The position numbers and the translations under genes were made by a program. Below the pieces are notes generated by a model. That model was not told the DNA's origin and did no database searches. It was given only the letters and a program-made list of their open reading frames with translations. From the IMG/VR virus record IMGVR_UViG_3300028592_000004, positions 124,001 to 188,000 of that record: 64,000 bases of DNA. One strand, 5' to 3'. Below, one piece after another: positions 8,470 through 61,624 of the stretch (the stretch's first letter is position 1; every line of letters starts with the position of its first letter).

Positions 8470-8472
8470 GGA

Positions 8473-44517: not shown

Positions 44518-47500
44518 TTACCGGGGATTGATAATCTCGACGTTGTCGTCCACGCCGATCTCGCCCCGGCGGTAGGCCTGTACTGCGTCTCTCACTGTAG
44601 CGAACGTCCTAGTCCGATTCGAGGTCGGCGAAGGCTTGGACGCCCGATAGAGGCCCCCAGCATACTCCTTCCCAGGCAGCTGGTGAGCGCGGAAGTTGGA
44701 GACCGCCAGCAAATTCCGGCTGGGCAGCATCTTCTCGTAGGCATCTGCGACAGCCTCGTCGCTCTGCGGAACATGGTACTGCATCGCGTCGCCGTCGAAG
44801 TCAGCGTTGAATCCGGTGACGATCGTCGGCGAGATGTGGATCGTGTCGTCCTGGATCAGTTTCGGCCGGAACGCCATCAGGTTGTACCGGTGAAGCGTCG
44901 GTGCCCGGTTGAGCACGACCGGCCGATCTTCCATCGTCCGGAGCAGCATCGTGCGGGCGCGATCGGACCGCGACGTGACAGCTCGGGCCGCGTCCATCCG
45001 ACTCATCCCGTTGCGAACCAGTCCGCGAACGATGTGCGGCTTGTAGACCTCCCACGCCTTATCTTCCGGGATCCCCACTTCGTCCATGTCGAGATCCGGG
45101 TCTGGAATGATTGTGCCGCGACCGACCGTGTCGACCACCGAGCCGATCAGCTTCTGCTGGACGAAGCCATACTTCGGCGAACCACCGAAGATCGTCTTCA
45201 GCAGTCCCTTTACCTTGCGTTCCTGGTTCTTCGGCTGAGTCGGATCCGCCAGACCCGTGAGGGCCTTGAACGAGTTGTAGACGGCCAGGCGCTCATCACC
45301 CAGGTCGTCGAACTTGCCGGCCGCATCCTTCAGGATTCCGTTCGAATCCATGATCTCCTTGTAGAGCGCGTTGGCGTCGGCCACCATCGGTAGCTTGGAG
45401 CCCTGCATGACAGACACCGGCCGGAACACCGGCGGAATGACCGGCACCTTCGTAAGCATCCAGTCCCGCGGGTGGATCCCGTGCTGCTCCGCGCTCTTGA
45501 GGTACTTCAGCTTCCGGATGGCCTCATCCCGCCGGGTCTTCTTGCCGGACGCGATATCCGCCCGAGCGTTCTCGATCATTCGCGGGAGGTTGATCGAGTC
45601 CAGGGCGTACTTGATGGCGCTCGGCCCGGTGCGGTCGTTCAGCTTCTCGCGGCCGGCGAGGATGTCGAGGAACTTGTTCTCGGTCAGGCCGAGGACGCGA
45701 CGGATCGGTTCCTCCATGACAGGCGACGGCATCGGCTCACTGAGCTTGATGAAGCTCCACCGGTTACCGCCGTGCCCGCCGGTCAACTCTGGATCGAACA
45801 GACCGCCCTTGACCGGGTTGAGCCCGCCCTTCCAGTCGACAGTGTCGGAATTGGTGATCTCGCGGTTGCCAGCGAACTCGTCGATGTCGGCGTCGCGGAG
45901 GGCCAGGGTGTTGAACCGTGTCCCGTTCCGCACCACGTTGATCCCGGAGCCGCGGAGCGTATCCACGAACTTCTTGTAGACCATCGGGACCTTCGGCATC
46001 GGCGGAGCGTGACCGCTCATGTACTGCGTCCAGTACTCCGGATGCTGCTGTCCGCGCACGACGGCAGCGTCACGCAGGAACTCCGTGGCTCCGTGGCTCA
46101 GGAGGGCGTTGGCATCCAGGAGACTCACCCGCTTGCTTCCGGTCTGACCACCCTTCGCCGGCAGCCCCTCGCTGGTGTAGCCGCCCATGCTCCGACCCTG
46201 GCCCTTCGACTCGGCCGTGTGGTGGAGCTTCATGAAGTAGCGGTTGCCGGTGAAGATCCCCGGGATCTTCCGGTTGTTCGAACTCGGGTCGATCAGGTCT
46301 TCGGTGTCGGACAGACCATTCTTCTGCAGCTCCTGCATAGCGTACTGCACAAGGTCCGGGATGTCCTTGAAGTCCTTGACGTTGTAGTGCTTGCCGGTCA
46401 TCGCGGCGATCTTGCCAAGCGTCGCCTCAACCACCTGGGCGGGGTTGGTGCGGGTGATGATCCCCAGCGGGTTGGCGAGCACTTCGTACGGCTTACCGTC
46501 TGCACCGACAGGCATCTGGCTGTCGGGGATGATCTTCGCGATGACGCCCTTGTCCCCGTAGCGGCCGGAGATCTTGTCGCCGGTCTGGGCCTGCATCACG
46601 CTCTTGACGGTGACCACGATCCCCTTGTCCGTCTTGGCGACGTCGACAACCTCTCCGGGAGAGTGGTGGTCCCAGGTCTCCGTCTGGTCAGAGAAGGACC
46701 GATCCCGGGCCTTGTGAAGTGAGTTCTTGGCCCGCTCCTTCTGCTTGGCGCCGAGGATGATCGGGTCATCCGGCTGCAGGATCGTTCCCGGCTTGACCAC
46801 GCCATCGTCATCGATCGAGTCCAGCACCTTCCGCGGGTACTTGCTCGGGAACATGCTGATGAAGTCCCGCTTCTTCGTCCGGATGTTGTCGTCCAGGTCC
46901 AGCCCGTGCTGGTACATGTGCTGACTGCTCAGCCGCTTGGCGAAGGACTCGCTGATGGCGAAGGCATCCTCAAAGTTGATCCCCTTCCAGGCGATGTAGG
47001 CCGTCCGGGCATTCCGGCCGAGGGCCACGACTCCGTTCTTGTCGGTGTAGTTCGAGTGGGCGAGGAGCTGTCCCTGACCAACGCGATCCCCGGGCTTCAC
47101 AACGGCGGTGTTGTGGAGGTAGGTCTTTCGGTTCGAGGGGTCGTGATTCCAGAGCTCGACGACTTCCTTCTTGCCGTCCGGCGTCTGAATCGTGATCTCG
47201 TCGTTGTCGACGTGGGTGACCGTCCCGTCGACCTTGCTGCGGGATGCCCCGAACATCTCGCCGTACCGGTTCTCAAAGCTGTCGTCGACGTCCTCCGGCA
47301 CGCCGGTGCGGACAAACGGAGCTTCCCCGTCGTCGAGCGAGAGGGCCTGCGTCAGCATTCGCTGGGCCATCGCCGCCCGCTGCCCCTTCATGGCCGACTT
47401 CATGGGGACCATCGTCACCATCGGAGAGAGTGTGCTCTCCATGTTCGGCACTTCGAAGTCAACCTTGTCGCGCGGCACGAACTTCATCTTGCCGCCGACG

Positions 47501-48978
47501 AGCGCCGGGACCTGGTCCTTGTAGGTCGCCATCGCGTTCGGGAAGGCGAGGACAGCCTTGGTGATCTCCTGCGGTGACTTGAAGACGGTCTGGCCGGTCC
47601 GCGCGTCCCGGAAGGGAGCGTACATACGGCCGTCCTTCCCCTTCTCCGCAGCGTAGGCGAAGCGGGAGTCGACACCGGCCTTGAGCGATTCAGGCGTGAC
47701 CAGGCTGTCGATGAAGCCGAACTGTCCAGGCTGGACGCTCCGCGCTTCGTCGGGCACCGAGTCGACGCTCGGGATCCCGCCCTCACCCAGCCGGCTGACG
47801 CGGTACATCTGCTCAATGAGCATCCCCGGGTTGATCTCTTCCCCGGGGTTCCCCAGACCGCTGTCGGTGATGGCGCTGAGCAGGCCGCTCGTCAGGATCC
47901 CGGACGGGATATGGTCCAGGTTCTTGCGGATGGTGCCCTTCCACAGCATCCGGCGGAGCATGTTCTTGTCTCGACCGAAACGCTCTGCGAGGAGATCTTC
48001 GGGGCCGAGGAGCGTCTGGAAGGCCGGGTTGTCGCGGTCGTCCGTCTCGTCTTCGCCCTTGTTGATCGCCAGCAGCTTGCGGGTGGCCGCGAGCCACGTC
48101 GGGGCGTCGACCTTGTCGAATGCCTCGCGAAGGGTCTCCTTGTTGACCTCCGGATCGAGCTTCATCTTCCGGAAGGCTTCAGCAACGGCCTGCCCGCGCA
48201 GTCCCTCGTCCGGTTCGTTGCCGCGGACCAGCCGCCGGTAGAGCTTGTCGACCGCGCCGCGATCGTTCTTCGCCATGTTGGCGGCAGCCAGCTCGGGTCC
48301 CCACGCTTCGTTCAGCTGGGACGGCGTGACACCCATTGCCCGCAGGACCGGCCACATGGGGATCTCACCTTGGGCGATCTTGAGTTTGAAGATCCCGGAC
48401 TCCGGATCCATCATCACCCGATGCGCGAGCCCCTGGCCGGGGAGCACGTTGATGTGGGACTCCAGCTCGCCGCTCTCCTTCTGGCGGGAGAACGCTCCGG
48501 ACATGAGGCGAAGCTGGTGGCCAAGCGAGTAGCGGTTCCCGCTGAGGATGAAGGCCCCGCGGTCCCCAAAGTAGGGGACGTTCGCGATTGTAGCCCGCCG
48601 TTCGGAGATCGGCTGCTGCGTGGCCAGGTCGACCAGGCGCCAGGTCCCTTTCAGCTTCCGGGACAGCGTCTTCCCGGTGAGGATGGCGTTCTTCTGGTCC
48701 TTCTTCGAGTACCGTTCCGGCCCCTCGTACGCCGGGTCGACCAGCTCCAGCCGGTGCGTCTTGCTCTCGACCGGCTGGAACTTCATCGCGGAGTTCAGCA
48801 CGTTGTCGAAGATCGACTGCCGGATGGCTGTGACGTCCCCGAAGCCTCGACGTCCGGTCGGCTGAGCGAGCGGCGGAGGAGACCAGGGAGCGGGCGCCGG
48901 AGGGGTGCCCATTTGTGAATCCAGCCCCTGCAGCAGAGGCGAGGGGCTGGGGAGAAGGCCGTCCATGAAGTCAGGCAT
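44518..48978 (-). CDS. Phage multisubunit RNA polymerase, beta + beta' N-terminal fusion (catalytic chain)
   Basis: beta motifs NFEDA, GDKISGRYGDKGVI, NPLG..TR.N..Q, YFMKLHH; beta' motifs GLFD, VPVIPP..RP, LNRAPTLHR, NADFDGD (44788-44808). Confidence 0.97.
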   Translation of the reverse strand: MPDFMDGLLPSPSPLLQGLDSQMGTPPAPAPWSPPPLAQPTGRRGFGDVTAIRQSIFDNVLNSAMKFQPVESKTHRLELVDPAYEGPERYSKKDQKNAILTGKTLSRKLKGTWRLVDLATQQPISERRATIANVPYFGDRGAFILSGNRYSLGHQLRLMSGAFSRQKESGELESHINVLPGQGLAHRVMMDPESGIFKLKIAQGEIPMWPVLRAMGVTPSQLNEAWGPELAAANMAKNDRGAVDKLYRRLVRGNEPDEGLRGQAVAEAFRKMKLDPEVNKETLREAFDKVDAPTWLAATRKLLAINKGEDETDDRDNPAFQTLLGPEDLLAERFGRDKNMLRRMLWKGTIRKNLDHIPSGILTSGLLSAITDSGLGNPGEEINPGMLIEQMYRVSRLGEGGIPSVDSVPDEARSVQPGQFGFIDSLVTPESLKAGVDSRFAYAAEKGKDGRMYAPFRDARTGQTVFKSPQEITKAVLAFPNAMATYKDQVPALVGGKMKFVPRDKVDFEVPNMESTLSPMVTMVPMKSAMKGQRAAMAQRMLTQALSLDDGEAPFVRTGVPEDVDDSFENRYGEMFGASRSKVDGTVTHVDNDEITIQTPDGKKEVVELWNHDPSNRKTYLHNTAVVKPGDRVGQGQLLAHSNYTDKNGVVALGRNARTAYIAWKGINFEDAFAISESFAKRLSSQHMYQHGLDLDDNIRTKKRDFISMFPSKYPRKVLDSIDDDGVVKPGTILQPDDPIILGAKQKERAKNSLHKARDRSFSDQTETWDHHSPGEVVDVAKTDKGIVVTVKSVMQAQTGDKISGRYGDKGVIAKIIPDSQMPVGADGKPYEVLANPLGIITRTNPAQVVEATLGKIAAMTGKHYNVKDFKDIPDLVQYAMQELQKNGLSDTEDLIDPSSNNRKIPGIFTGNRYFMKLHHTAESKGQGRSMGGYTSEGLPAKGGQTGSKRVSLLDANALLSHGATEFLRDAAVVRGQQHPEYWTQYMSGHAPPMPKVPMVYKKFVDTLRGSGINVVRNGTRFNTLALRDADIDEFAGNREITNSDTVDWKGGLNPVKGGLFDPELTGGHGGNRWSFIKLSEPMPSPVMEEPIRRVLGLTENKFLDILAGREKLNDRTGPSAIKYALDSINLPRMIENARADIASGKKTRRDEAIRKLKYLKSAEQHGIHPRDWMLTKVPVIPPVFRPVSVMQGSKLPMVADANALYKEIMDSNGILKDAAGKFDDLGDERLAVYNSFKALTGLADPTQPKNQERKVKGLLKTIFGGSPKYGFVQQKLIGSVVDTVGRGTIIPDPDLDMDEVGIPEDKAWEVYKPHIVRGLVRNGMSRMDAARAVTSRSDRARTMLLRTMEDRPVVLNRAPTLHRYNLMAFRPKLIQDDTIHISPTIVTGFNADFDGDAMQYHVPQSDEAVADAYEKMLPSRNLLAVSNFRAHQLPGKEYAGGLYRASKPSPTSNRTRTFATVRDAVQAYRRGEIGVDDNVEIINPR

Positions 48979-50817: not shown

Positions 50818-51216
50818 TCAGCTCCCGGGGGTCCAAATCGGGCTCCTCGGTACGAGGCCACCCATGTAACGATTATGGTGTTTCATCTGCCTCATGACAC
50901 CAGGTTTGAACGGATCTCCCTGTGCGTCGGCCTGCTGACAGGTTAGGATCATATCCTCGACGCACTTCTGCATCTCTGCCTTTTCTTTCGGGCAGGTGGA
51001 GCGATCCCGGCTCTGCCGGATGGCGTCCGCTCGCAGCAGGAACTCAGCGCGGGACGCAGTCTTGAACTCCCCGTCCCGTTCGTCGAGTGTTCGCAGCAGG
51101 CCGCGCTCCGCGAAGAACGTGATCCACTTGTACCGGAAGATCTTTCGGTTGGCTCCGCCTCGAATCTGAAACGGAGCTGCAGCCAAAGCACGTGACAGGC
51201 GACCGCGATGGGCCAT
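50818..51216 (-). CDS. Hypothetical protein
   Basis: AAGGA RBS before MAHRG; 132 aa. Confidence 0.55.
   Translation of the reverse strand: MAHRGRLSRALAAAPFQIRGGANRKIFRYKWITFFAERGLLRTLDERDGEFKTASRAEFLLRADAIRQSRDRSTCPKEKAEMQKCVEDMILTCQQADAQGDPFKPGVMRQMKHHNRYMGGLVPRSPIWTPGS
50872..50900 (-). promoter_or_regulatory. Sigma70-like promoter upstream of the RNAP/head operon
   Basis: GTGTCA-17 nt-CATAAT. Confidence 0.4.
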
Positions 51217-51232: not shown

Positions 51233-52135
51233 TTACCGAACGTGGAAGCGGCCTTTCCGGGACCGCTGATAAGTCGGAGGAGGGGAGTAACGTGGAGCCG
51301 CCTGGAGCTGGGGAGCCTGCGGCGGCAGTACGAACTGCGTCTGTTCGACCGGACGTGGCGCCGGCATCGGAGCCTTCTCAACCTGGGCGGGTGCAGTCTG
51401 CCCGTCCCGGATGATGACATCGGCAACTGCCCGTTCGGCCTGCCGTGTCCGGTGGCTCTTGTACTTCGCCATCGCCAGGAACTCGTTGAGCTTCGTGACC
51501 CGGGAGTACATGCCGTACTTCGGATTGGCGGGCGGCTCGCGACCGATGCAGATCCCGATCAGCGTGCCGGTCGGACTGAACAACCCGCCGCCGGACTCTC
51601 CGGACGTCGGGATGTGGTCGACGATAATCGCCGTGTCGTCCGTGACGATCTTGCCTTCGTTGTCCAGCCAGAGTGCCTTCCGGGCAAGCCATTCTTTCGG
51701 CTGGACGCCGAGCGGCGATCCAACCGCATGAACGACGTCACCGACACGGGGAACCCACTCCCGGTCGTCGACGTGGTCGACTGCTTTCAGACCGAGGTTG
51801 CCAGGCCCCGTGAGAAGCTGGGTGTCGTACTGGCTACTCTGCCCGATCACCGACATCTGTGCCTGGTTGGCGAAGTCCTTACCCCACTGGATGGTGTAGC
51901 GGGTGTCGTCCGAGGGGAGCTTCGCGGACTCGAAGTGAAAACAGGTCGAAACCAGGGTTCGCTCTGGGCTCGATTCGAGCACAGTTCCGGACCCGTAGTG
52001 CTCGTGATTCTGAGTGAGGTTCTGGTACTTCACTCGAACTGCAGCCTCGATCGGCTTGACGTCCGGAGCGATGTAGACCTGCCCACCGCAGACGGCCCCG
52101 AAGATCGACAGAATGATTGGCGCGATATGAAGCAT
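51233..52135 (-). CDS. Exported trypsin-like serine protease (S1/PA clan)
   Basis: Signal-like N-terminus MLHIAPIILSIFGAVCG; GSGT, TCFH (His), YD (Asp), GESGGGLF (Ser). Confidence 0.85.
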   Translation of the reverse strand: MLHIAPIILSIFGAVCGGQVYIAPDVKPIEAAVRVKYQNLTQNHEHYGSGTVLESSPERTLVSTCFHFESAKLPSDDTRYTIQWGKDFANQAQMSVIGQSSQYDTQLLTGPGNLGLKAVDHVDDREWVPRVGDVVHAVGSPLGVQPKEWLARKALWLDNEGKIVTDDTAIIVDHIPTSGESGGGLFSPTGTLIGICIGREPPANPKYGMYSRVTKLNEFLAMAKYKSHRTRQAERAVADVIIRDGQTAPAQVEKAPMPAPRPVEQTQFVLPPQAPQLQAAPRYSPPPTYQRSRKGRFHVR

Positions 52136-52139
52136 CGCA

Positions 52140-52153
52140 AGTCCTCCGTGACT
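52140..52153 (-). promoter_or_regulatory. CsrA/RsmA-type hairpin at RBS
   Basis: AGTC-ACGGAG-GACT. Confidence 0.6.
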
Positions 52154-52190
52154 GAGAAACATCCCTGTGGTCGCACTGTATCGACCGAGA

Positions 52191-53360
52191 TCAGTTGCCG
52201 ACAAGCGGGAACGTCGGTTCCAGCATCTTCGGCACGTTTGCCAAATGCACGCGGGCTTCGCGGCTGGTGACCGTGAAGCCGTCGATCGAAGTCGTGATGT
52301 TGATGAACTTCTTGACCGTGACCTTTGGCTTCGGGTCGAGGAAGCTCACCGAGAGCGTGTCGCCCTGCCGCCGAACGGAGATCCGGACCTCGGCATTCGA
52401 CGTGGCCGTGATCCCATCAGACAGCTGGATCGTCTGACCGCCCAGCAGGCTGAGCATCGTGCCGACGAAGTCCTTCTTGTTCATCGGGACCGGGTTGCCG
52501 GCCCGCGGCACGGGCTTGTTGTTGGCCTTCGCCAGACTGACGGCCACAGCCTCCCAGACCCGGGCGTCTTCGGGAGGTGGCTCGGCCGTTGGAGGTGGCC
52601 CGGACATCGCTGCCGGCGGCGCCACCTTCCAACGGTTCTTGTTCAGCTCGTCGACCATCGCGACCCGCGACTTCCATTCGGTCTTGAACGCGTCCTTGGC
52701 GATCGCGCCAATGACCGGCTCGCCGATCTGGGCTACCTGACCGTCCCGGAGCCGATACCAGAACGTGAACCGCGGCAGCCGGAAGTCGGGCTCGGAGGAA
52801 CCGTGATCGACTATTCGGATGTGGGCGGTGCCGTCCATTTGCTTTCCGGTCGTGTAGACCGGCGCAAGCGACGGGGCCGTCTGGGTGATCCAGCTCTTGC
52901 AGAAGCCACACCAGTCCGCCGTGTCGATTTCGGCCCAGAACTCAAGTCCACTGGGAGCGTGGAGGCTTTCGATCTTGATTGCTTCTTCGGGGGCGTACTG
53001 GGGGACTCGCCGGTCTTCTTCGAACGTTCCTTGGATCGGAGGGTCTTCAACCGCAGCTTGCGGAGGCGGCGGAGGCTGGACCGCTGGACCTGCTTGCACG
53101 GCGGGACCAGGTCCCACCGAATGATTCGGCACTTGAGGGTAGCCAGCTGCTCCAGCGCGGCCAGTATCTGCTGTCGTTTGTGCGGCGTCATTGACCACCT
53201 CCCGAACGTCGACGAATTCCCCGTCCGTACGGGCCAGAGCGAAACGCGCTCGGGCCAGCGAGAGATCGGCGTAGGAGGGAGCCCAATTCGACTTGTAGGA
53301 CAGGTCCAAGCCTGTGCACCCGCAGAACGCGAGGAGCACGAGCAACAGAAACTGGATCAT
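52191..53360 (-). CDS. Lipoprotein with thioredoxin-like CxxC domain
   Basis: MIQFLLLVLLAFCG-C lipobox; TADWCGFCK; cis-Pro-like LPRF; Pro-rich linkers. Confidence 0.7.
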   Translation of the reverse strand: MIQFLLLVLLAFCGCTGLDLSYKSNWAPSYADLSLARARFALARTDGEFVDVREVVNDAAQTTADTGRAGAAGYPQVPNHSVGPGPAVQAGPAVQPPPPPQAAVEDPPIQGTFEEDRRVPQYAPEEAIKIESLHAPSGLEFWAEIDTADWCGFCKSWITQTAPSLAPVYTTGKQMDGTAHIRIVDHGSSEPDFRLPRFTFWYRLRDGQVAQIGEPVIGAIAKDAFKTEWKSRVAMVDELNKNRWKVAPPAAMSGPPPTAEPPPEDARVWEAVAVSLAKANNKPVPRAGNPVPMNKKDFVGTMLSLLGGQTIQLSDGITATSNAEVRISVRRQGDTLSVSFLDPKPKVTVKKFINITTSIDGFTVTSREARVHLANVPKMLEPTFPLVGN

Positions 53361-54343
53361 GCGGCGAGACTCCATTTGAGGTGCTGCAGGGTGAAGCCCT
53401 TCGCGCCAGCACCGGTGTACGAATCGTTCTGCTTGAGCATGCGATCGACGGTCGCAAAGTCGACCGCGAAGCATCCTTCAGGCAGCTCCACTTCCTCTCC
53501 GCTTTCGCAGAAGATCTTGTTCGGGCCGATCGGCTGATTGCCCCAAGACTGCTGACAGACGAAAGCAGGCCGGTTTCCGCGGGCCAGGAAGTAACCCCGG
53601 AAGTACATGCAGTGATTCCACGTCCCGTTCGCATAGTCGAAGCCGTCGCGGTCCCGGAAGTTCCGGAAGCCGACGTTCGAGCAGACGGGGATACCACGCC
53701 AGTTGCAGATCGAGGCTCGCGCCTCCTCGGCTGAGCGAACCGGCGCGATGTAGGTGATCGGATGCTGCCGGGACTCTGTTTCCAGCTCCGCCGGAACACC
53801 GTTACGGCTCGTGCCCCAGGTCTGAGCGATGTTGTCGTCCGGCGTCCGCAGGTCGTACTGACCGTACTTCAGGCGGAAGACGACGCCCCACTGTCGGACC
53901 CACTCCGCCATCCAGGCCCCGTAGGAGCCCTGGTTCCCGCCGAGCCGGCCTTTCCCGATCTCGATCCGAGAGCCGGCGTAGAGCGGTTCGGTGGCCACAG
54001 GGGCAACCCAGCGCTCCAGGGAGCCGAACATGATCTGGATCAGGAACAGGTCCTGAGCGAAGCGGCCCCAGCCCTGCGAAACGCAGGTCCCCAGGGTCTG
54101 CTTGAAGGCCCGGAGCATTCGCCCCAGGACCTTCAGCTCAGCTCGCCACAGGAAGGTGTCCGGAAACGAAGCCGCCGCCATCATGGCGGGTGCAGCCTCG
54201 CGGAGGGACGGGAACCAGTTTGTGGCAGCGGCAGCAGTACGCCTGACCTCGCTCTGGTTGTTGATCCAGCCGAGGTTATCCGCCGTAAAGCCACGTGGGA
54301 GGGCGCGTGTTTGCTCACGCTTACCTCGACTACGAGCAGACAT
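53357..54343 (-). CDS. Papain-like (C1) cysteine peptidase
   Basis: Q..GTCVS (Cys), NHCM (His), QQSWG (canonical NSWG); no signal peptide. Confidence 0.8.
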   Translation of the reverse strand: MSARSRGKREQTRALPRGFTADNLGWINNQSEVRRTAAAATNWFPSLREAAPAMMAAASFPDTFLWRAELKVLGRMLRAFKQTLGTCVSQGWGRFAQDLFLIQIMFGSLERWVAPVATEPLYAGSRIEIGKGRLGGNQGSYGAWMAEWVRQWGVVFRLKYGQYDLRTPDDNIAQTWGTSRNGVPAELETESRQHPITYIAPVRSAEEARASICNWRGIPVCSNVGFRNFRDRDGFDYANGTWNHCMYFRGYFLARGNRPAFVCQQSWGNQPIGPNKIFCESGEEVELPEGCFAVDFATVDRMLKQNDSYTGAGAKGFTLQHLKWSLAA

Positions 54344-54356
54344 CCATGTCCTCCCG

Positions 54357-54833
54357 TTAGCCGGCAACGGCCTGACAGGCCGCAGCAAGCTGACGCAGTT
54401 TGAGAACGAACGCAGCCCGGCCGGCGTCATCCAAATCGCCAACAGGGAGCGTACGGAGCCAGGCGTCGACGACGACTGGCAATTTGACGATCAGACCCGT
54501 CTTCAGTCCGATCCGTTCGCGGGCAGTGGCCAGCGCGGAGAGCGCGGCGGCACCGGTCTGGATCGACTTATCCAGTTCGACCGCATCGGCCGCTGCCGTG
54601 TACAGCGAGCAATAGTCGCGGGCCTTAATCTGGTAGTCGGTGAATCCGCTGGTCTGGAAGGCATCGGCGACCTGGGCGTTGAGCGTCGGGTCCGCCGGCA
54701 CAGCCGGATTGACGGGGTTCACCGGGTTGACCGGGTTGACGGGGTTCGGAACAGGCTGCGGACCGGGGACCGGCGGGGCACACCCCACCAGCATCCCGAG
54801 GAGCAGCGCACTACCGAGCAGCTTTCGCGACAT
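54357..54833 (-). CDS. Lipoprotein with Pro-rich (NPV)n linker
   Basis: LLLGMLVG-C lipobox; PNPVNPVNPVNPVNP 9-nt tandem repeat near 54705-54750. Confidence 0.75.
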   Translation of the reverse strand: MSRKLLGSALLLGMLVGCAPPVPGPQPVPNPVNPVNPVNPVNPAVPADPTLNAQVADAFQTSGFTDYQIKARDYCSLYTAAADAVELDKSIQTGAAALSALATARERIGLKTGLIVKLPVVVDAWLRTLPVGDLDDAGRAAFVLKLRQLAAACQAVAG

Positions 54834-55179
54834 TCGACCCCTCCTTGGGTTCGTCGGTCGTTTGGCCCAGGGTCGTCACGACCACCTGGGTCACGGCCTG
54901 CGCGAAGGCAGGCGTGGATTCGCCGGACAGCACCAGGTCAACCTTACGGTCGCCGACCTGGAAGCTGAGCTTCGACTGCGGAACGCCACTCGATCCGCGG
55001 AGAAAGAGCTCCCGCGAGCCAAGGGCGCCGGCGCCGAGAAGCCCGGCAACGATCTGGGCAATGCTGTACCCGGACGTGAGGGGCACACCAGCGTTGGCCG
55101 CAGCGGTGAGGCCGTACGTGGCCTGGGCGGTGAGAGCCGTTCCCACGAGCGTGAGAACAGGCGCGAGGAATTTGAGCAT
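54811..55179 (-). CDS. Small membrane protein (holin-like candidate)
   Basis: Two hydrophobic segments and a hydrophilic C-terminus; 122 aa. Confidence 0.5.
   Translation of the reverse strand: MLKFLAPVLTLVGTALTAQATYGLTAAANAGVPLTSGYSIAQIVAGLLGAGALGSRELFLRGSSGVPQSKLSFQVGDRKVDLVLSGESTPAFAQAVTQVVVTTLGQTTDEPKEGSNVAKAAR
54837..54850 (-). promoter_or_regulatory. CsrA/RsmA-type hairpin at RBS
   Basis: ACCC-AAGGAG-GGGT. Confidence 0.6.
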
Positions 55180-55220
55180 GAGAGGCTCCGAGAACAGTCC
55201 GTTGTCGTCGGGTTGCTGGC

Positions 55221-55718
55221 TCAGACCGCCTGAGTCAGCTTGCCGCTACGGAAGAGGTTGATCAGCTCGATCACGAGCTGGACGGCGGTGAGAACCGTCG
55301 TCGGGTTGAAGAGAAGCGAGCGCGGCCGGGCTTCCGAGTCCGGAGCGTTCGGGTCGTTCTGCAGCTCCGCCTTGACGGCGTCGACCAGGCTCTCGACGTC
55401 AGCGGCGGAGACCTGATGGTTGTCCGACCGGCGGCGGAATACGCCGTACACGACGGCCGCGGCGGCACTGACGAGCAGCGTCCGCTCCGCGACGAACTGG
55501 GCAAGCGGGCAAACCCGATCGTCCAGCGTCGTCTTGGTCATCGCCGTGAAGGGGCAGACGAGGTTCAGGGCGAGCTGAACCGCAACCTGCGTCCCTTCAT
55601 AGGAGCTGAGGTCCGCGTTGAGCAGCGGAGCCCCGGCGCTGAGGAACGCCGGGAGCTGCGACAGGTCGAGGAAGTTCTGAAGAGTGCCGACAGACTTGAT
55701 CTGTGCGAAGACGTCCAT
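55221..55718 (-). CDS. Hypothetical protein, amphipathic
   Basis: Start MDVFAQ after AAGGA; first gene of the envelope/protease cassette. Confidence 0.55.
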   Translation of the reverse strand: MDVFAQIKSVGTLQNFLDLSQLPAFLSAGAPLLNADLSSYEGTQVAVQLALNLVCPFTAMTKTTLDDRVCPLAQFVAERTLLVSAAAAVVYGVFRRRSDNHQVSAADVESLVDAVKAELQNDPNAPDSEARPRSLLFNPTTVLTAVQLVIELINLFRSGKLTQAV

Positions 55719-55785
55719 GTTGGGTCTCATTCCTTGAGTGGGAGAATCCAATTCCTTGCGGCGCTAAGCATGCCGCGACTCCCCT

Positions 55786-55814
55786 GTTGTACCCCGAATG
55801 GACCGGCCACGGAA
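55786..55814 (-). promoter_or_regulatory. Sigma70-like promoter for the envelope/protease cassette
   Basis: TTCCGT-17 nt-TACAAC in an intergenic gap. Confidence 0.4.
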
Positions 55815-55825
55815 GCCTCATTCCC

Positions 55826-56824
55826 TCAGCTACTTCTGATCCTCCCGTTGGACCCGATCCGGAGGTTGTCGATGTTGAATTCGCCGTCCGCGAGGACTTC
55901 CACGAAGGCGAAGCCGTGGTTCCACTTATTGATCCGCGCGTACTCCGGGTAGAGCTCGCACAGGCAGCCTGTCGACCAGGTCGCAACCTCTTGGTGCTTC
56001 CAGTTTGGCTCGGAGTGCTGACTCGACCGGTGGCCGTGACCAACCAGGACCGTGTCGTTCATCCGGAGGAACGCTCCGCGGGCCATGTTGACGGGGTTCG
56101 TCAGACCCTTCGGCAGTTCGTGCCCGTGGAAGATCGGCAGGTTGCCGGCCATGATCGGCCGCTGGTCGCCGACGATCTCGATACCGTGCTTGTCCGCGTG
56201 CAGCCAGGTTTCCAGGTCCAGCAGCGGATCATCCGCTACCTCGGCGAAGTAGTTCCAGATGTAGTGGTCCCACCGCTCGTCATGGTTCCCCTTCTTCAGG
56301 ATGATCCGCGCCTTCGGGAACTCGCTGCGGAGCCACGCCAGCCCCTGACGCTGGCAGGCGATCTCTTCCTTCAGGTTCCGATCCTTGGGGTTCTTCTGGA
56401 AGCGGGAGACCGAGTACCAGTCGCCATAGTCTCCGTTGATCAGGAGGATGTCTGGCTTCCGGTCTTTGCAGTACTTCACCGCGGCGCCGAGCGCCATCTC
56501 CGAGTGGAAGGGAAAGTGGATGTCCGACAGGACGGCCAACTGGATCCCAGTCGGGAGCACGACCGGCTCCCAGGCTTCAGCCTTGCTCGGCGGCATGGTC
56601 GGCTTCGTGCCGGCCTTTCCGTTCGGCCGTGGACTCGTTGCCTCGTCACGATGCTCCTTGCCCTTGTTGCCGCGGATGGTGCGAACGTAGTCACGGCCCT
56701 GTTCGATTGAGATGCCGTACTCCTTTGCGAGGCGCCTGGCGAGCGTTCGCGAGGCTGCATCGGGATACTCTCTACACAGCTGCTCTGCAGCCAGTCGGAT
56801 TGGCCCTTTCGGTGGTTTGCTCAT
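55826..56824 (-). CDS. Calcineurin-like metallophosphoesterase with N-terminal HTH-like segment
   Basis: SDIH, GDYGD, GNHD, HGH, GHGH motifs. Confidence 0.9.
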   Translation of the reverse strand: MSKPPKGPIRLAAEQLCREYPDAASRTLARRLAKEYGISIEQGRDYVRTIRGNKGKEHRDEATSPRPNGKAGTKPTMPPSKAEAWEPVVLPTGIQLAVLSDIHFPFHSEMALGAAVKYCKDRKPDILLINGDYGDWYSVSRFQKNPKDRNLKEEIACQRQGLAWLRSEFPKARIILKKGNHDERWDHYIWNYFAEVADDPLLDLETWLHADKHGIEIVGDQRPIMAGNLPIFHGHELPKGLTNPVNMARGAFLRMNDTVLVGHGHRSSQHSEPNWKHQEVATWSTGCLCELYPEYARINKWNHGFAFVEVLADGEFNIDNLRIGSNGRIRSS

Positions 56825-57135
56825 TCGGAATCCCTCCTGTATCCGAGTCGGTACAAAATACGGGCCAGGTCGGTCGCCACAGTGGCGCACCATTCCTCCG
56901 ACCTGTGCCAGTCTGCGGCGTGCAGGACCTCATGGATGATGACGTCCAGCTCTCGCTCGCCCGAGATGGCGGTCGAGATCACGATCTCACGCTTCTTGAG
57001 ATCGGAAGAAGAGAATGGGTGCTGGGTCTTGGCCTCACCCGTCGTGAACCCATCGAGATTACGGAGATACTTGCGGACGAACCGCCAGCGCTTCCCAAAA
57101 ATGATGACCTGCTTCAGCACTCGTCCACAATCCAT
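56821..57135 (-). CDS. Small HExxH (minimal zincin-like) protein
   Basis: IIHEVLHA...SEE; ATGA coupling to the phosphoesterase. Confidence 0.65.
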   Translation of the reverse strand: MDCGRVLKQVIIFGKRWRFVRKYLRNLDGFTTGEAKTQHPFSSSDLKKREIVISTAISGERELDVIIHEVLHAADWHRSEEWCATVATDLARILYRLGYRRDSE

Positions 57136-57157: not shown

Positions 57158-59512
57158 TCAGTCGAAGGCGGCGCTGATGGCACCGGTCAACAACCCGCCC
57201 CAGAGGCCCGCTTGCTGCAGGCCCACCTGGGCCTCGGGATTGAGGCCCGCTAGGGCTCCCATTGTTTTACCCAGAAGCAACCCACCGAGAAATCCCCCAG
57301 CCCCGCTGAAGGCAACGGTCTTGGCGATGTCGAAAGGCGAAACGGAGGGCTTTCCACCGCTCCCCAGCGAGGCGGCGACGAGCGTACCGCTCGCGGCTGC
57401 AGCGACTTGCGCTGGCGTGCCACCGAAGTTCGAGCCGGGCCGTGCGGCGTCATTCCAGATCACACTCCCGAAGGCGTCGACGGGGATATTCGACAGGAAC
57501 ATTGTCCCCGTCATGTCCTCCGCGGCGTTGGTTTTCGTCCGACCGGACCAGCCGAAGTCGTCGGCCGGCATCTCGGAACCCATCCCAGACAGGTTCGAGT
57601 TCCACCCGTGCGGCGTCTTGAGACCCCAGTACAAACCCGGAGCAGCGCCCAGGCCGGCGCCCAGGAGCCCCAGCGTGCGTCGCATCCGCTTGCCGGAGAA
57701 GTACTGCTCCGGAAGCATGTTGTCCATCAGATAGCCGGCACCGTAGCCCAGGCCGGCTCCCAGAGCTCCACCAACCAGCGTGCTGGAGAGCGGGCTCGGC
57801 CCACCGAGCGGCTTGTTGACCTTCGACCACATGTCCGAAATCCCCTCGAACATCGCGCCCTGCTTGAACATCGTCCAGCCCGGCTCGTCGGCCGGGATCG
57901 TACTGACCAGGCCCTTCTCCGGATGGACGAACCAGCAGCCCTCTGCCTCCGCATACTTCACGACCAGCGGCGCCGCCTGCTCGTACAGAGCTCGCACCCG
58001 GGCGGGGACTTCCCGCCAACTGAGGTGTTCCAGCTCGTCGATCGCGCTCGCTTCCTTCTGGTTGCGCTGTCCGATCTCCTTCAACAGATCCCGGAACTTC
58101 ATGTTGATCTCTTCCTTCTGCTCGGCCAGACGCCGCAGGTGATAGTCCGCTCCAGACCGATCATCGGTCAGGCCGAGGAACCGTTCCAGAGAGGATGGCT
58201 CCCGAGGGCGGGACAGGAAGTTCTGGATGAGGACGTTCCGCTGGTCTGTCGGAAGGTAGCCGTGACTATCGTGACGGATCCCGCGGCCTTTGACCTGAGT
58301 ATCGCGAGCCTCGTTCCAGTGCGGATCCAGGATCTGCATCAGCCGAGTGCCACGGAGCGAGATCCCTTCCGAGCCGGCGGGACCGGCGAGCAGCACCGGA
58401 GCCAACCCGTTGTTGTAGCTCTCAATAATCCGCTTCCGCTCCAGGTCGGCGATACCGCCGTGGAAGAGGCCGTAGGGGATCTTGTCTCGCTCCAGGGCCG
58501 CGGCGTAGGGACGGAGGCCGGCGTCAATGAAGTTCGAGTAGACGAGCGCTCGGCTCTTCGGGTTCTTCGCCATCTGCTCCTTGAGGAGCTTATAGGCCAG
58601 CTGCAGCTTGGGCGAGGAATCGAACGCGGCCAACGGGTCCGGGTTCGACATGAACGGGAACATCGACAGCCCGATCTGTCGCGGTCCGGTCAGGAAGGAC
58701 GTCATCCGCTTCCGTTCGAGGGCGGAGAGCGGGAAGTTGTTCTGCAGCTTGTAGCGCAGGACCCAGGGGATCGAGTTCCAGAACGACCGATACGCGGTCG
58801 TCTGCTCGTCCGACATGTCAACTTCGTGCATCTCGTCTGTGCGATCCACGAGCGGCTTATCGGGAGCGTGGTAGTCGACGTGGCCCGCCAGCAGATCTTC
58901 CAGCCGGCCGACGTTCTTCGGCTCCATCACCTGGCCGGGCGTGACACCGAACAACGAGGCGAAGAAACCCGGGCGAACCGTCTTCTGCTTGATGAACTGG
59001 TGTGTGAACGCGTCCGGCGTGATCCGCTCGCCGGTCAGGATCGACATCGGCGCCGCGAGATCGGACGGGTGATTGACGATCGGCGAGCCCGAGAGGAGGT
59101 AAACGTGCTTGGCCTTGTTCGCCAGGTCCGTCACTGCCTGCGTCCGCTGAGACTCAGGGTTCCGGATCCGGTGAGCCTCATCGACGATCAGAGTGTCCGC
59201 GGCCGGGGCCTTGCCCGCCGTCGCGCCCTCGTAGGACACAACGTTGCCCATCAGCGAGCCGTCAGTGAACTTGGCCTGCTCCTTCGCAAAGTTGGGACGC
59301 AGTGCCGCTGGCACGATAGCCGTGTACGGCTTGCCGGCGTTCTCTGCCGCAGCGATCGAGGCCAGAGTCTTCCCGCTCCCCACGTCGTGGAAGAGGAGCA
59401 TGCGGGACTCTTCGTCCTTCCCGGTCTGGGCGATCCGCTTCTGTTGAGGCTGCAGCTCGACGCCCGGCAGGAGGGCCGCGATCTTCAACTGGTCAACGAA
59501 GTCGGCGTCCAT
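57158..59512 (-). CDS. SF2 (SNF2-like) helicase/translocase fused to a C-terminal glycine-zipper region
   Basis: GSGKT, DEAH, SGSP, EGISL, Q..GRGIR; C-terminal GGALGAGLGYGAG and similar segments. Confidence 0.85.
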   Translation of the reverse strand: MDADFVDQLKIAALLPGVELQPQQKRIAQTGKDEESRMLLFHDVGSGKTLASIAAAENAGKPYTAIVPAALRPNFAKEQAKFTDGSLMGNVVSYEGATAGKAPAADTLIVDEAHRIRNPESQRTQAVTDLANKAKHVYLLSGSPIVNHPSDLAAPMSILTGERITPDAFTHQFIKQKTVRPGFFASLFGVTPGQVMEPKNVGRLEDLLAGHVDYHAPDKPLVDRTDEMHEVDMSDEQTTAYRSFWNSIPWVLRYKLQNNFPLSALERKRMTSFLTGPRQIGLSMFPFMSNPDPLAAFDSSPKLQLAYKLLKEQMAKNPKSRALVYSNFIDAGLRPYAAALERDKIPYGLFHGGIADLERKRIIESYNNGLAPVLLAGPAGSEGISLRGTRLMQILDPHWNEARDTQVKGRGIRHDSHGYLPTDQRNVLIQNFLSRPREPSSLERFLGLTDDRSGADYHLRRLAEQKEEINMKFRDLLKEIGQRNQKEASAIDELEHLSWREVPARVRALYEQAAPLVVKYAEAEGCWFVHPEKGLVSTIPADEPGWTMFKQGAMFEGISDMWSKVNKPLGGPSPLSSTLVGGALGAGLGYGAGYLMDNMLPEQYFSGKRMRRTLGLLGAGLGAAPGLYWGLKTPHGWNSNLSGMGSEMPADDFGWSGRTKTNAAEDMTGTMFLSNIPVDAFGSVIWNDAARPGSNFGGTPAQVAAAASGTLVAASLGSGGKPSVSPFDIAKTVAFSGAGGFLGGLLLGKTMGALAGLNPEAQVGLQQAGLWGGLLTGAISAAFD

Positions 59513-60189
59513 GCCAGCACCCTCTCCAGCTCCATCAGAGGCTTGGCCGAGGACGTTTTCTCCGCGGCCCAAATGCAACTCGGACAGTCGTGGTCGACGA
59601 CGTGCCGCTCATTGTGGGAGCAGCGACACCGGGTCTCGTGCCCGCACTTATGTTGAAAGATCCCGTGCGCTGACGCTGCCTTCGCGACGTCGCTGTTCTC
59701 CTGCAGGATCTTCTTCTTCCGGACCGCGCAGGTGATGTGGAAATCGTACTCGTTGTTCTTGGGGCGTGCTGACAGCCCGTATGACTTGCGAAGTTTCTCC
59801 AGATCCGGAGACTTCACTTTCAGGAACCAGACCCGCGACATTTCCTTCCAGCTCGTTGGCGCGACCTCTTGCAGCGCCCCAAGCTGGTAGTGGAACTCCC
59901 TTCCCCGCTCGACGATGACGTCGATGCCGCCAATCTGCTCGATCTCTTCCGGACGCATGACGCTGATATGCGCATTCAGCGGTTCATTGTTGTGTGGCCC
60001 GGGCAATTCTGCGCCAAGGACCCGCATCGCCGAGAAGACACCCCTGACTAGATCATTCGGGACTGTCAGCAACAGCCATCCACTCTGAGACGCAATCAGC
60101 CGGCCCGCCAAAACGGGGGCATCGACCGCGTCACCCGCGGACTTCAAGAGGTAGCCGGACGCTTCGCCTAGTTGAAAGTCTGACGTCAC
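59485..60189 (-). CDS. 2H phosphoesterase family protein with C-terminal Cys/His cluster
   Basis: Two HxS/T motifs (AHISV, FHITC) about 80 aa apart; GTG start after GAGGA. Confidence 0.75.
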   Translation of the reverse strand: MTSDFQLGEASGYLLKSAGDAVDAPVLAGRLIASQSGWLLLTVPNDLVRGVFSAMRVLGAELPGPHNNEPLNAHISVMRPEEIEQIGGIDVIVERGREFHYQLGALQEVAPTSWKEMSRVWFLKVKSPDLEKLRKSYGLSARPKNNEYDFHITCAVRKKKILQENSDVAKAASAHGIFQHKCGHETRCRCSHNERHVVDHDCPSCIWAAEKTSSAKPLMELERVLAWTPTSLTS

Positions 60190-60430
60190 GGACCTTTCCT
60201 CGTAGAAGTCCAGGTCACGTCTCCCCGGATCCCCTCCCGGGGTCCTGACGGAAAATGAATTTCCGCCTCGCAACGGCATCGCAGGCACATCCGTTGCTCC
60301 TCCATAGTCTCCGCAGTTTCCCATGAGACCGTTCCTGGGAGCCCTCGCAATCCTCGCGTGAAGCTCCCTCCTAACCGGGCAGTGCCATGCCCAGACGTGA
60401 CGCGTCTCACCTTAACCGAAATCCGTACTG
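60190..60430 (-). ncRNA. Candidate structured GGA-rich RNA (CsrB/RsmZ-like sponge or structured leader)
   Basis: Largest intergenic gap; eight consecutive hairpins; 17 GGA triplets by manual count. Confidence 0.55.
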
Positions 60431-60434
60431 GTCA

Positions 60435-60809
60435 CTACTCATCTTCATTGAGATTGGGGACTTCCAGGAAAACACGGCTGACGGATTCAAATGTGATCCG
60501 GATCCAGGTTGGGGTCAGATCTTCGAGGACTTGTGTTCGGTGTTCGACCAACCTGTACACGCAGCGCTCAACTGCGTTGTACAGGTTGTCCTCGGACCGA
60601 ATTGCCTGCAGTCGGTTGACAACTGGGCTCAAACGTCGCATCAATCCCAGAAAGATCTTCTGCAGACGCCTGCCTTCGAGGTCCGACTCGATGGCAAGGC
60701 GGGACAGAGGCTCTCCGCGCTCAACGCATTCCATCACCGCCGCGGTGATGGACATTGCCAACGTTTGCCAGATCAGCCATTCCTGGGTGATCGGCAGCTT
60801 CCTAGCCAT
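60435..60809 (-). CDS. Hypothetical protein
   Basis: Start MARKLP overlaps the caspase stop; 124 aa. Confidence 0.5.
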   Translation of the reverse strand: MARKLPITQEWLIWQTLAMSITAAVMECVERGEPLSRLAIESDLEGRRLQKIFLGLMRRLSPVVNRLQAIRSEDNLYNAVERCVYRLVEHRTQVLEDLTPTWIRITFESVSRVFLEVPNLNEDE

Positions 60810-61606: not shown

Positions 61607-61624
61607 ACGTTCCTCCTTGAACGT
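61607..61624 (-). promoter_or_regulatory. CsrA/RsmA-type hairpin at the caspase RBS
   Basis: ACGTTC-AAGGAG-GAACGT. Confidence 0.65.

What the first reader, a model, noticed from the sequence alone, without database searches (positions are those of the whole stretch)
51233..55814. Protease-based envelope cassette where a lysis module would be expected
Seen: one operon with its own candidate promoter. It encodes an amphipathic protein, a 2-TM protein, a Pro-linker lipoprotein, a signal-less papain-like peptidase (Asn replaced by Gln in QSWG), a CxxC thioredoxin-like lipoprotein and an exported trypsin-like protease. Four of the six starts carry Csr-type hairpins and the leader has three CANGGA sites. 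No muramidase or amidase is recognisable in the window. Inference: a non-canonical lysis system pairing a disulfide reductase with proteases against a protein-rich, cross-linked envelope. That would fit a Planctomycetota-like host, which is unverified.
Basis: partly seen in the sequence, partly recalled or inferred. Interest (0 to 1): 0.72.

Follow-up and report, generated by a model that had tools for sequence, protein, structure and literature searches.

The report
Phage cysteine-protease and thioredoxin envelope cassette
A 229-kb phage that probably infects Planctomycetota carries a conserved gene set built around a papain-type protease and an exported thioredoxin, and because it has no recognisable cell-wall-degrading enzyme this set is its best candidate for bursting the host, though that is untested.

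Summary
The six minus-strand genes are real. g4 is a papain-family (C1) cysteine peptidase: AF2 pLDDT 89.6, top fold matches xylellain and procathepsins, residues Q82/C87/H244, Gln265 where papain has Asn, no signal peptide. g5 is a probable thioredoxin-fold lipoprotein (WCGFC). g6 is a weak trypsin-like match.

The promoter, the operon boundary and the Csr-hairpin claims do not stand.

Comparative evidence:
- An exported Pro-linker/helical protein lies directly upstream of the peptidase in about 110 of 135 related loci.
- An exported thioredoxin lies directly downstream in 12 loci.
- A small domain matching the g5 C-terminus follows in six of those loci.
- g1 and g6 are private to this phage.

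No canonical lysin family was found in this complete genome (12 families tested). None scored above cut-off in 26 related phage records. A full Pfam sweep of one complete 41.5-kb relative also found none.

Bacterial-genome hits are mostly Planctomycetota. Some are stand-alone, syntenic chromosomal modules, so the peptidase pair is also a cellular system.

Best reading: an envelope-directed proteolysis module used for lysis (confidence about 0.45). The substrate, the timing and the role of the thioredoxin are inferred.

The parts
55731..55825 (-). Intergenic leader between the metallophosphoesterase gene and g1. It holds three CANGGA sites. No sigma-70-like promoter was detected.
55221..55730 (-). 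g1: 169-aa protein with two moderately hydrophobic segments (residues 80-98 and 140-158). It is an orphan and a possible membrane or amphipathic protein.
   Evidence: Only a weak phrog_11860 hit. Atlas hits are at chance level. No homologue in 154 related loci.
54811..55179 (-). g2: 122-aa protein with two weakly hydrophobic N-terminal segments. It is a holin-like lead only. Its 3' end overlaps the g3 start by 23 nt.
   Evidence: The nearest language-model clusters are viral hypothetical proteins (0.90) and several holin Pfam families (0.81-0.85). No profile homology to the small membrane proteins of other cassettes.
54357..54833 (-). g3: lipoprotein with lipobox LVGC (Cys18), a PVNP-repeat linker and a helical domain of about 110 aa. 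By position and architecture it is the counterpart of the exported partner found upstream of the peptidase in most relatives.
   Evidence: Homology is not proven: hhalign E 0.009, a leave-one-out HMM does not find it, and it is an orphan.
53357..54343 (-). g4: signal-less papain-family (C1) cysteine peptidase. Gln82, Cys87 (54083-54085) and His244 (53612-53614) are conserved. Gln265 (53549-53551) stands in place of Asn.
52191..53360 (-). g5: probable lipoprotein. It has a Pro-rich linker, a thioredoxin-fold domain (WCGFC, residues 150-154, 52899-52913), a second Pro-rich linker and a conserved C-terminal domain of about 100 aa and unknown fold. Its start overlaps the g4 stop (ATGA).
51233..52135 (-). 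g6: trypsin/HtrA-like serine peptidase with an N-terminal membrane anchor (His67, probable Asp104, Ser181 in GESGGG) and a Pro/Gln-rich tail. It is specific to this lineage.
55826..56893 (-). Upstream neighbour g0: metallophosphoesterase. A phosphoesterase also lies near the peptidase in some small relatives.
50818..51216 (-). Downstream neighbour d0. It is conserved in related jumbo phages and starts 16 nt after the g6 stop, so the gene array continues.

Best explanation
The region is the phage copy of a conserved envelope-proteolysis module, most likely used to open the host envelope at the end of infection.

The parts:
- Core: an exported Pro-linker/helical protein (g3 here) followed by a papain-family cysteine peptidase (g4).
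- In one recurring sub-type, to which this phage belongs, the peptidase has no signal peptide. It is followed by an exported thioredoxin-fold protein and a small domain of about 100 aa. Here both are fused in g5.
- Small membrane proteins (g1, g2) lie upstream, and a phage-specific membrane-anchored trypsin-like protease (g6) lies downstream.

Proposed sequence of events:
1. g4 accumulates in the cytoplasm.
2. g1 and/or g2 permeabilise the inner membrane in a holin-like way and release g4.
3. In the periplasm g4, helped by g6, cleaves structural envelope proteins of a Planctomycetota-type host.
4. g5 supplies thiol-disulfide chemistry. It either keeps Cys87 reduced or opens disulfide-linked Cys-rich wall proteins.

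Shown: the folds and motifs, the conserved gene neighbourhoods, the membrane-anchored periplasm-facing forms in relatives, the host phylum signal, and the lack of canonical lysins.

Inferred: the timing, the holin role, the substrate, the direction of g5 redox activity, and lysis itself.
For: - g4 is a high-confidence papain fold with an intact Gln/Cys/His set.
- 60 of 106 homologues carry an N-terminal membrane segment ahead of the catalytic domain. The family therefore acts at the envelope, and it comes in anchored and soluble forms, as endolysin families do.
- The partner domain lies directly upstream of the peptidase in about 110 of 135 loci.
- All 12 thioredoxin hits in 154 loci lie immediately downstream of the peptidase. 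All 11 of the linked peptidases examined (one row per distinct peptidase) are the soluble type.
- The g5 C-terminal domain recurs as a separate gene after that thioredoxin in six loci.
- The thioredoxins of L085 and L024 match TIGR01068 at about 1e-6. P0108 matches PF00085 at 1.3e-10.
- No GH24, GH19, GH25, GH108, SLT, Amidase_2, Amidase_3, M15_3, M15_4, NlpC/P60, CHAP or PG_binding_1 was found in this CheckV-complete genome.
- None of nine lysin families scored above cut-off in 26 related records, 13 of them at least 90% complete.
- A Pfam sweep of all 51 ORFs of a complete 41.5-kb relative found head and packaging genes plus Peptidase_C1, but no cell-wall hydrolase or wall-binding domain.
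- In the roughly 40-kb relatives the pair sits among conserved same-strand late-type genes of mostly unknown function (one tail-completion hit), flanked by small membrane proteins. In G007 it is co-directional with the head and packaging genes.
- g2 has holin-family leads.
- Host envelope context: Cys-rich YTV wall proteins in Planctomycetia (PMC12673574), and peptidoglycan synthesis genes that are non-essential in Planctopirus limnophila (PMC10632474).
Against: - There are no expression or activity data.
- Planctomycetes do have peptidoglycan (PMC4432640), and a C1 protease is not a known peptidoglycan hydrolase.
- In this jumbo phage the cassette sits between helicase/phosphoesterase genes and RNA-polymerase genes, not in an obvious late module.
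- The partner-peptidase pair is also a stand-alone chromosomal module with cellular, partly syntenic flanks in Planctomycetota. It can therefore exist without killing the cell.
- g1, g2 and g3 have no demonstrable homologues.
- Complex prediction for g3 with g4 gave no answer.
- A lysin of a wholly unknown family elsewhere in the genome cannot be excluded. The Pfam-wide sweep was done for one small relative, not for this 229-kb genome.
Confidence: 0.45

Rival explanations
1. Envelope remodelling rather than lysis. The phage carries a host-derived surface-protein processing system. It trims receptors, pili or wall proteins during infection, for superinfection exclusion, for host takeover or to prepare the surface for release, without being the lytic enzyme.
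For: - The same partner-peptidase module is a stand-alone, syntenic chromosomal locus in Planctomycetota with cellular flanks.
- In this phage the cassette lies next to helicase, phosphoesterase and RNA-polymerase genes.
- The accessory genes vary between relatives: a PEP-CTERM protein and an alpha/beta hydrolase in L011, thioredoxin and trypsin-like genes here. That pattern fits host-surface adaptation.
Against: - It leaves these phages with no identified lysis enzyme at all.
- The signal-less form of the peptidase needs membrane permeabilisation to reach the envelope, which points to a terminal event.
- The module is near-universal in hundreds of viral contigs at a conserved position.
Confidence: 0.25
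2. True endolysin acting on peptidoglycan or its tethers. The C1-fold peptidase cleaves peptidoglycan stem peptides or cross-links, or the proteins that anchor the outer membrane to peptidoglycan, as CHAP and NlpC/P60 clan-CA peptidases do. The 'protein wall' idea would then be unnecessary.
For: - Planctomycetes have peptidoglycan (PMC4432640).
- Clan-CA cysteine peptidases are common endolysin domains (established knowledge).
- Phage cysteine endoisopeptidases lyse pseudomurein walls (PeiR, PMC2812497).
- The family also occurs in Bacteroidota, Alphaproteobacteria and Gammaproteobacteria records, not only in Planctomycetota.
Against: - The closest structures are protein-cleaving C1 enzymes: xylellain, cathepsins B, S and L, and Cwp84. 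They are not CHAP or NlpC/P60.
- No peptidoglycan-binding domain was found in these phages.
- The tight link to an exported thioredoxin has no parallel in peptidoglycan endopeptidases.
Confidence: 0.15
3. Not one functional unit. Only g3-g4-g5 form a module. g1, g2 and g6 are unrelated orphan genes that happen to lie alongside, and the appearance of a six-gene cassette is an artefact of a long co-directional gene array.
For: - g1, g2 and g6 have no homologues next to the peptidase in 154 loci.
- No promoter or terminator delimits the region.
- Every gene in the 64-kb window is on the same strand.
Against: - All six products are predicted to be membrane-associated or exported, or to act at the envelope.
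- Spacing is tight, with overlaps between g2/g3 and g4/g5.
- Other cassettes carry small membrane proteins of the same kind at the same positions, though they are not demonstrably homologous.
- The nearest relatives of g6 appear, by eye only, to fuse a thioredoxin-like region to the protease.
Confidence: 0.1

Closest known systems
Phage holin-endolysin cassettes, including soluble versus signal-anchor-release (SAR) endolysins such as P1 Lyz, which is activated by disulfide isomerisation
   Same: - An enzyme gene is flanked by small membrane proteins.
- The enzyme family comes in signal-less and N-terminally anchored forms.
- Thiol-disulfide chemistry is associated with the enzyme.
- No other lysin is present in the genome.
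   Different: - The enzyme has a papain-family protease fold, not a peptidoglycan glycosidase, amidase or known endopeptidase fold.
- The redox partner is a separate exported thioredoxin, not an intramolecular cysteine switch.
- A holin function for g1 or g2 is only a lead.
- No spanin was identified.
Clan-CA cysteine-peptidase lysins: CHAP and NlpC/P60 endolysin domains, and the pseudomurein endoisopeptidases PeiW, PeiP and PeiR of methanogen phages
   Same: - A Cys-His peptidase is used by a phage against the wall of its host.
- PeiR is a precedent for a lysin matched to a non-standard wall (PMC2812497).
   Different: - g4 belongs by fold and motifs to family C1 (Q-x4-C ... H ... N/Q-S-W-G).
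- PF00877 and PF05257 were not detected.
- The substrate is unknown.
Bacterial C1A-like peptidases: xylellain (Xylella fastidiosa, 3ois), Lpg2622 (Legionella) and Cwp84 (Clostridioides difficile S-layer protease)
   Same: - They are the best structural matches, and the match includes an N-terminal region aligned to pro-regions.
- Cwp84 acts on surface-layer proteins.
   Different: - Sequence identity is only 10-15%.
- g4 has no signal peptide.
- Gln replaces the Asn that orients the catalytic His.
- The conserved exported partner and the thioredoxin neighbours have no counterpart in those systems.
Mycobacteriophage LysA/LysB two-enzyme lysis
   Same: The concept of extra lytic enzymes aimed at a non-peptidoglycan envelope layer. 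The related jumbo phage L011 carries an alpha/beta hydrolase in the equivalent cassette.
   Different: No LysA-type peptidoglycan hydrolase is present, and the chemistry is proteolytic and redox rather than esterase.

Membership tests
Peptidase family C1 (papain; PF00112) | Catalytic Cys preceded by the oxyanion-hole Gln, plus a catalytic His | tested here: met
   Q82, C87 and H244 are invariant in a 42-sequence alignment. Codons were checked.
Peptidase family C1 (papain; PF00112) | Asn that orients the His (N-S-W-G motif) | tested here: not met
   The window protein has Gln265 (QQSWG). Most relatives have NSWG and 9 of 106 have QSW. The change is conservative and recurs in the closest clade.
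Peptidase family C1 (papain; PF00112) | Papain fold | tested here: met
   AF2 model with pLDDT 89.6 and pTM 0.88. Foldseek top hits are xylellain, procathepsin B and cathepsins S and L, with probability 1.00 and E 1e-7 to 1e-5.
Peptidase family C1 (papain; PF00112) | Pfam model score above the gathering threshold | tested here: not met
   g4 gives no Pfam hit at E<=0.1. Three homologues carry a precomputed PF00112 annotation. The L014 homologue scores 5.5e-5.
Thioredoxin fold (PF00085 and relatives), g5 residues ~130-250 | W-C-x-x-C active-site motif | tested here: met
   WCGFC at residues 150-154. It aligns with WCGPC of P0108.
Thioredoxin fold (PF00085 and relatives), g5 residues ~130-250 | Profile match to thioredoxin | tested here: inconclusive
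   Pfam gives no hit. An HMM built from the thioredoxins of six other cassettes hits g5 at E 3.6e-6, and g5 is its only hit among all ORFs of the genome, at E 6.4e-4. Atlas leads are all thioredoxin.
Thioredoxin fold (PF00085 and relatives), g5 residues ~130-250 | Beta-alpha-beta ... beta-beta-alpha fold with a cis-Pro loop | tested here: inconclusive
   The AF2 model has pLDDT below 50 in this region. The order of secondary structure is compatible. LPRF aligns with the LPAF cis-Pro loop of P0108.
Trypsin-like serine peptidase (PF13365 / HtrA-like), g6 | His-Asp-Ser triad in order, and a model score above cut-off | tested here: inconclusive
   His67 and Ser181 (GESGGG) are invariant against the nearest relatives, while the Asp column is gapped. 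Trypsin_2 scores 23.3 bits against a cut-off of 27.6. HtrA chains in the PDB match at E 0.07.
Phage holin-endolysin lysis cassette | Muralytic (peptidoglycan-degrading) enzyme | tested here: not met
   The only enzymes present are a C1 protease, a thioredoxin-fold protein and a trypsin-like protease. Activity on peptidoglycan was not tested.
Phage holin-endolysin lysis cassette | Adjacent small membrane protein able to act as a holin | tested here: inconclusive
   g1 and g2 each have two modest hydrophobic segments. g2 has language-model leads to holin families at 0.81-0.85. There is no family or profile match.
Phage holin-endolysin lysis cassette | No other endolysin in the genome, so the cassette is the sole candidate | tested here: met
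   Twelve lysin or wall-binding Pfam families are absent from the complete genome. Sub-threshold M23 hits lie inside RNA-polymerase beta-like proteins. Limits: the test went family by family, and no all-Pfam sweep of this genome was done.
Phage holin-endolysin lysis cassette | Late expression, and lysis when expressed | not testable with these tools
   This needs transcript time courses and expression experiments.
CsrA-regulated leader | GGA motifs in hairpin loops at translation starts, above background | tested here: not met
   4 of 6 starts against 26 of 58 other starts. CANGGA is not enriched in the window.

The most novel reading that the evidence does not exclude
Phages of Planctomycetota, and some other lineages, may lyse their hosts with a new class of lysin system. 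It would consist of a papain-family protease with an exported partner and a periplasmic thioredoxin that together dismantle a disulfide-linked, protein-based load-bearing wall layer. The stand-alone chromosomal copies in Gemmataceae would be the cellular 'protein autolysins' from which it derives, mirroring the relationship between autolysins and endolysins for peptidoglycan.
Probability: 0.3. Interest if true: 0.85.

Novelty: new variant of a known kind. Interest (0 to 1): 0.66.

Why it matters
- Almost nothing is known about phages of Planctomycetota or about how they breach an envelope long described as protein-rich and rich in cysteine.
- If this module is the lytic system, it defines a protease-based alternative to peptidoglycan hydrolases.
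- It would give a marker for host prediction. There are hundreds of uncultured viral contigs with this gene and none among 50,697 GenBank phage records.
- It points to cellular homologues that could be the enzymes remodelling the planctomycete protein wall during growth and budding.
- It offers a natural case of a cysteine protease paired with a dedicated periplasmic thioredoxin.

Tried and rejected
- M23 peptidase hits at window 47038-47232 and 42230-42370. Rejected as lysins: they are below cut-off and lie inside RNA-polymerase beta-like proteins.
- g3 as a proven member of the partner family. hhalign is weak, a leave-one-out HMM finds nothing, and no homologues were found in the 5.8-billion-protein search. 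It is kept only as a counterpart by architecture and position.
- g3-g4 binding. The complex prediction scored 0.13 against a mark of 0.32, which is no answer either way.
- Homology of g1 or g2 to the small membrane proteins of other cassettes. All hhalign probabilities were below 10%.
- Fold of the g5 C-terminal domain. No match above Z 5.5.
- The full-length g5 model is too poor to use.
- Sigma-70 promoter, terminators, Csr hairpins and CANGGA enrichment. All at background level.
- Isolated-phage relatives. tblastn with two divergent peptidases against GenBank phages found nothing.
- Literature searches found no description of this cassette.
- A Pfam-wide sweep of the whole 229-kb genome was planned. 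It was dropped because it needed very long typed reference lists. It was done on a complete 41.5-kb relative instead.


Full report
CONTEXT. The window is bases 124001-188000 of a single 229,210-bp viral record with 61% G+C. CheckV rates it 100% complete, and its ends overlap by about 100-148 bases. Every sizeable gene in the window is on the minus strand, and there are no tRNAs. The neighbourhood:
- upstream, an SNF2-type helicase fused to a Gly-rich membrane tail (57158-59578) and a metallophosphoesterase (55826-56893);
- downstream, four small genes conserved in two related jumbo contigs (d0-d3);
- then RNA-polymerase beta-like proteins of 1486 and 638 aa;
- a tail sheath lies further on.
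This is a jumbo myovirus with its own multisubunit RNA polymerase.

THE OBSERVATION. The six ORFs are present.
- Refined starts: g1 55221-55730, g2 54811-55179, g3 54357-54833, g4 53357-54343, g5 52191-53360, g6 51233-52135.
- g2 overlaps g3 by 23 nt. The g4 stop overlaps the g5 start (ATGA). The other gaps are 13-55 nt.
- There is no boundary after g6. The conserved gene d0 starts 16 nt later, and no terminator-like site lies on that strand.
- No sigma-70-like promoter precedes g1.
- The 'Csr-type hairpins' can be reproduced at 4 of 6 starts. The same property holds for 26 of 58 other Shine-Dalgarno-bearing starts in the window.
- CANGGA occurs 171 times in the window against 160.7 +/- 12.3 expected.
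The regulatory part of the finding is therefore at background level.

THE PROTEINS: g4.
- g4 has no Pfam, PHROG, NCBIfam or PDB sequence match of its own.
- It belongs to a family of more than 100 metagenomic proteins, three of them annotated PF00112.
- Gln82, Cys87, His244, Ser266 and Trp267 are invariant.
- Position 265 is Gln here and in the nearest clade, and Asn in most others.
- An AlphaFold2 model built from that alignment is confident (pLDDT 89.6). Its best PDB matches are xylellain, procathepsin B, cathepsins S and L, Lpg2622 and Cwp84.
- It has no hydrophobic N-terminus.

THE PROTEINS: g5.
- It is nearly an orphan. Only the last 100 residues or so find relatives. One of these (P0108) is a lipoprotein with a bona fide thioredoxin domain (PF00085, 1.3e-10) followed by the same C-terminal domain.
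- The WCGFC segment of g5 aligns to WCGPC of P0108.
- It is hit by a thioredoxin HMM built only from other cassettes, and it is the sole hit among all ORFs of the genome.
- Its nearest Atlas clusters are thioredoxins.
- The structural model of this part is poor, and the C-terminal domain has no fold match.

THE PROTEINS: g6, g3, g1 and g2.
- g6 is a distant trypsin/HtrA-like protein, below Pfam's threshold, with conserved His and GESGGG.
- g3 is a textbook lipoprotein with a PVNP linker and a helical domain.
- g1 and g2 have two modest hydrophobic segments each.
- g2 has lead-level resemblance to holin families. g1 has none.

COMPARATIVE EVIDENCE. The peptidase family occurs in at least 466 IMG/VR contigs. 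It occurs in no record of 50,697 GenBank phages.
- In 154 fetched loci, an HMM of the helical C-terminal domain of an exported protein hits directly upstream of the peptidase in about 110 of 135 loci with enough flank. That protein has a signal or anchor, sometimes a beta domain, and a Pro-rich linker. Two sub-families of this partner are related by profile comparison (76%, E 2e-5).
- g3 has the same architecture and position, but its homology could not be shown.
- A thioredoxin HMM finds 12 ORFs in these loci. Every one is immediately downstream of the peptidase on the same strand. All the linked peptidases are the signal-less type.
- In six of those loci, from an AT-rich phage group and a Planctomycetota MAG, a protein of about 100 aa homologous to the g5 C-terminus follows the thioredoxin. 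g5 is therefore a fusion of two neighbouring genes.
- g1, g2 and g6 have no counterparts by sequence. Small membrane proteins occupy similar positions in other cassettes.
- 60 of 106 family members have an N-terminal membrane segment. The family therefore works on the periplasmic side and exists in anchored and soluble forms.

IS THERE A CANONICAL LYSIN?
- Twelve lysin or wall-binding Pfam families give nothing in this genome. The exception is sub-threshold M23 signals inside the RNA-polymerase beta-like proteins.
- Nine families give nothing above cut-off in 26 related viral records, 13 of them at least 90% complete.
- For one complete 41.5-kb relative with terminal repeats, all 51 ORFs were scanned against Pfam. 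The scan found terminase, portal, Mu-F, capsid, cement protein, sigma factor, methylases, RusA, DnaB, HNH, DUF669 and Peptidase_C1 (5.5e-5). It found no cell-wall hydrolase or wall-binding domain.
- In that phage all ORFs run in one direction. The cassette lies at 7.5-10 kb, at the end of a block of conserved larger ORFs of unknown function.

HOST, AND A COMPLICATION.
- In one genome per species of GTDB, 74 loci encode relatives, most of them in Planctomycetota. They include the complete chromosome of Limnoglobus roseus PX52 and Gemmata algarum.
- A related jumbo phage carries a PEP-CTERM protein in the equivalent cassette.
- Many of the bacterial loci contain only the two- or three-gene module. 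Their flanks look cellular, with radical-SAM MoaA-like and aldo-keto-reductase-like neighbours in Limnoglobus (by inspection).
- Those flanks share nothing else with the viral loci.
- In two pairs of species the flanks are syntenic.
- The module is therefore also a cellular system. The phage copies stand to it as endolysins stand to autolysins, or they are borrowed host genes with another use.

MECHANISM. The best-supported reading is an envelope-directed proteolysis module used for egress.
1. The signal-less peptidase is released through membrane damage caused by g1 and/or g2.
2. It cleaves structural envelope proteins.
3. The thioredoxin protein supplies thiol-disulfide chemistry, and g6 adds a second protease.

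The literature makes this plausible.
- Planctomycete envelopes are protein-dominated and contain Cys-rich YTV proteins (PMC12673574).
- Peptidoglycan is present (PMC4432640), but its synthesis genes are dispensable in Planctopirus limnophila (PMC10632474).
- A methanogen prophage lyses its host with a cysteine endoisopeptidase (PMC2812497).

What remains inferred: the timing, the holin role, the substrate (protein wall, peptidoglycan peptides or tethers), and whether g5 reduces, oxidises or isomerises. Rivals are surface remodelling without lysis, a true peptidoglycan endopeptidase, and the possibility that only g3-g5 form a unit.

VERDICT. The cassette core (partner, C1 peptidase, thioredoxin, small domain) is real and conserved. 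It appears to be undescribed, and it is linked to Planctomycetota. A lysis role is the leading but untested explanation.

Noticed in passing
window 60802-61605 (-): A caspase-like peptidase (PF00656, E 1.3e-24) is encoded about 5 kb upstream of the cassette. This phage is unusually rich in proteases.
   Followed up: no
window 44518-48978 (-) and 41567-43483 (-): Phage-encoded multisubunit RNA-polymerase beta-like proteins, about 32% identical to the RpoB-like protein of Salmonella phage Arash. They produce sub-threshold Peptidase_M23 hits that could be mistaken for a lysin.
   Followed up: partly
window 57158-59578 (-): An SNF2-type helicase is fused to a long Gly-rich, membrane-like C-terminal region. 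In the related jumbo contig L011 the two parts are separate genes (L011 31-4485 and 4781-6007).
   Followed up: no
window 59485-60324, 61624-62487, 62518-63309 (-): A 2H phosphoesterase (PF22547), a glycosyltransferase-like gene and a methyltransferase gene lie upstream of the helicase.
   Followed up: no
window 1038-1820 (-): A dense, regularly spaced run of CAGGGA inside the ORF 93-1967 suggests a repetitive (possibly Gly-rich, collagen-like) coding region.
   Followed up: no
L011 9977-10471 and 10488-11339: In the 226-kb relative the peptidase is followed by a PEP-CTERM-tagged protein (PF07589) and an alpha/beta hydrolase, in place of the thioredoxin and trypsin-like genes. The accessory genes of the cassette are swapped between relatives.
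   Followed up: partly
L081 (Limnoglobus roseus PX52 chromosome) 7252-9304; L098/L102; L133/L141: Stand-alone chromosomal modules (partner, membrane-anchored peptidase and a small exported 'KPLVVFVG' protein) have cellular flanks that are syntenic between species. This suggests a cellular envelope-protease system in Gemmataceae.
   Followed up: partly
P0114-P0116 (nearest relatives of g6): By eye, these 460-aa proteins carry an N-terminal thioredoxin-fold-like region without CxxC, fused to the trypsin-like domain. That would echo the g5-g6 adjacency. It was not tested.
   Followed up: no
L024 5170-5904, L032 1131-1769, L063, L085 9056-9649, P0108: The cassette thioredoxins carry a Cys-rich segment before the thioredoxin domain (roughly CxCxGxG ... 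DG ... CPC ... CxC), reminiscent of DnaJ-type zinc fingers. g5 lacks it.
   Followed up: partly
genome ends (G000:C1 1-148 and the last ~100 bases): The last 100 bases repeat positions 49-148 of the contig, so the assembly is probably circular or terminally redundant, although the record is classed as linear.
   Followed up: partly
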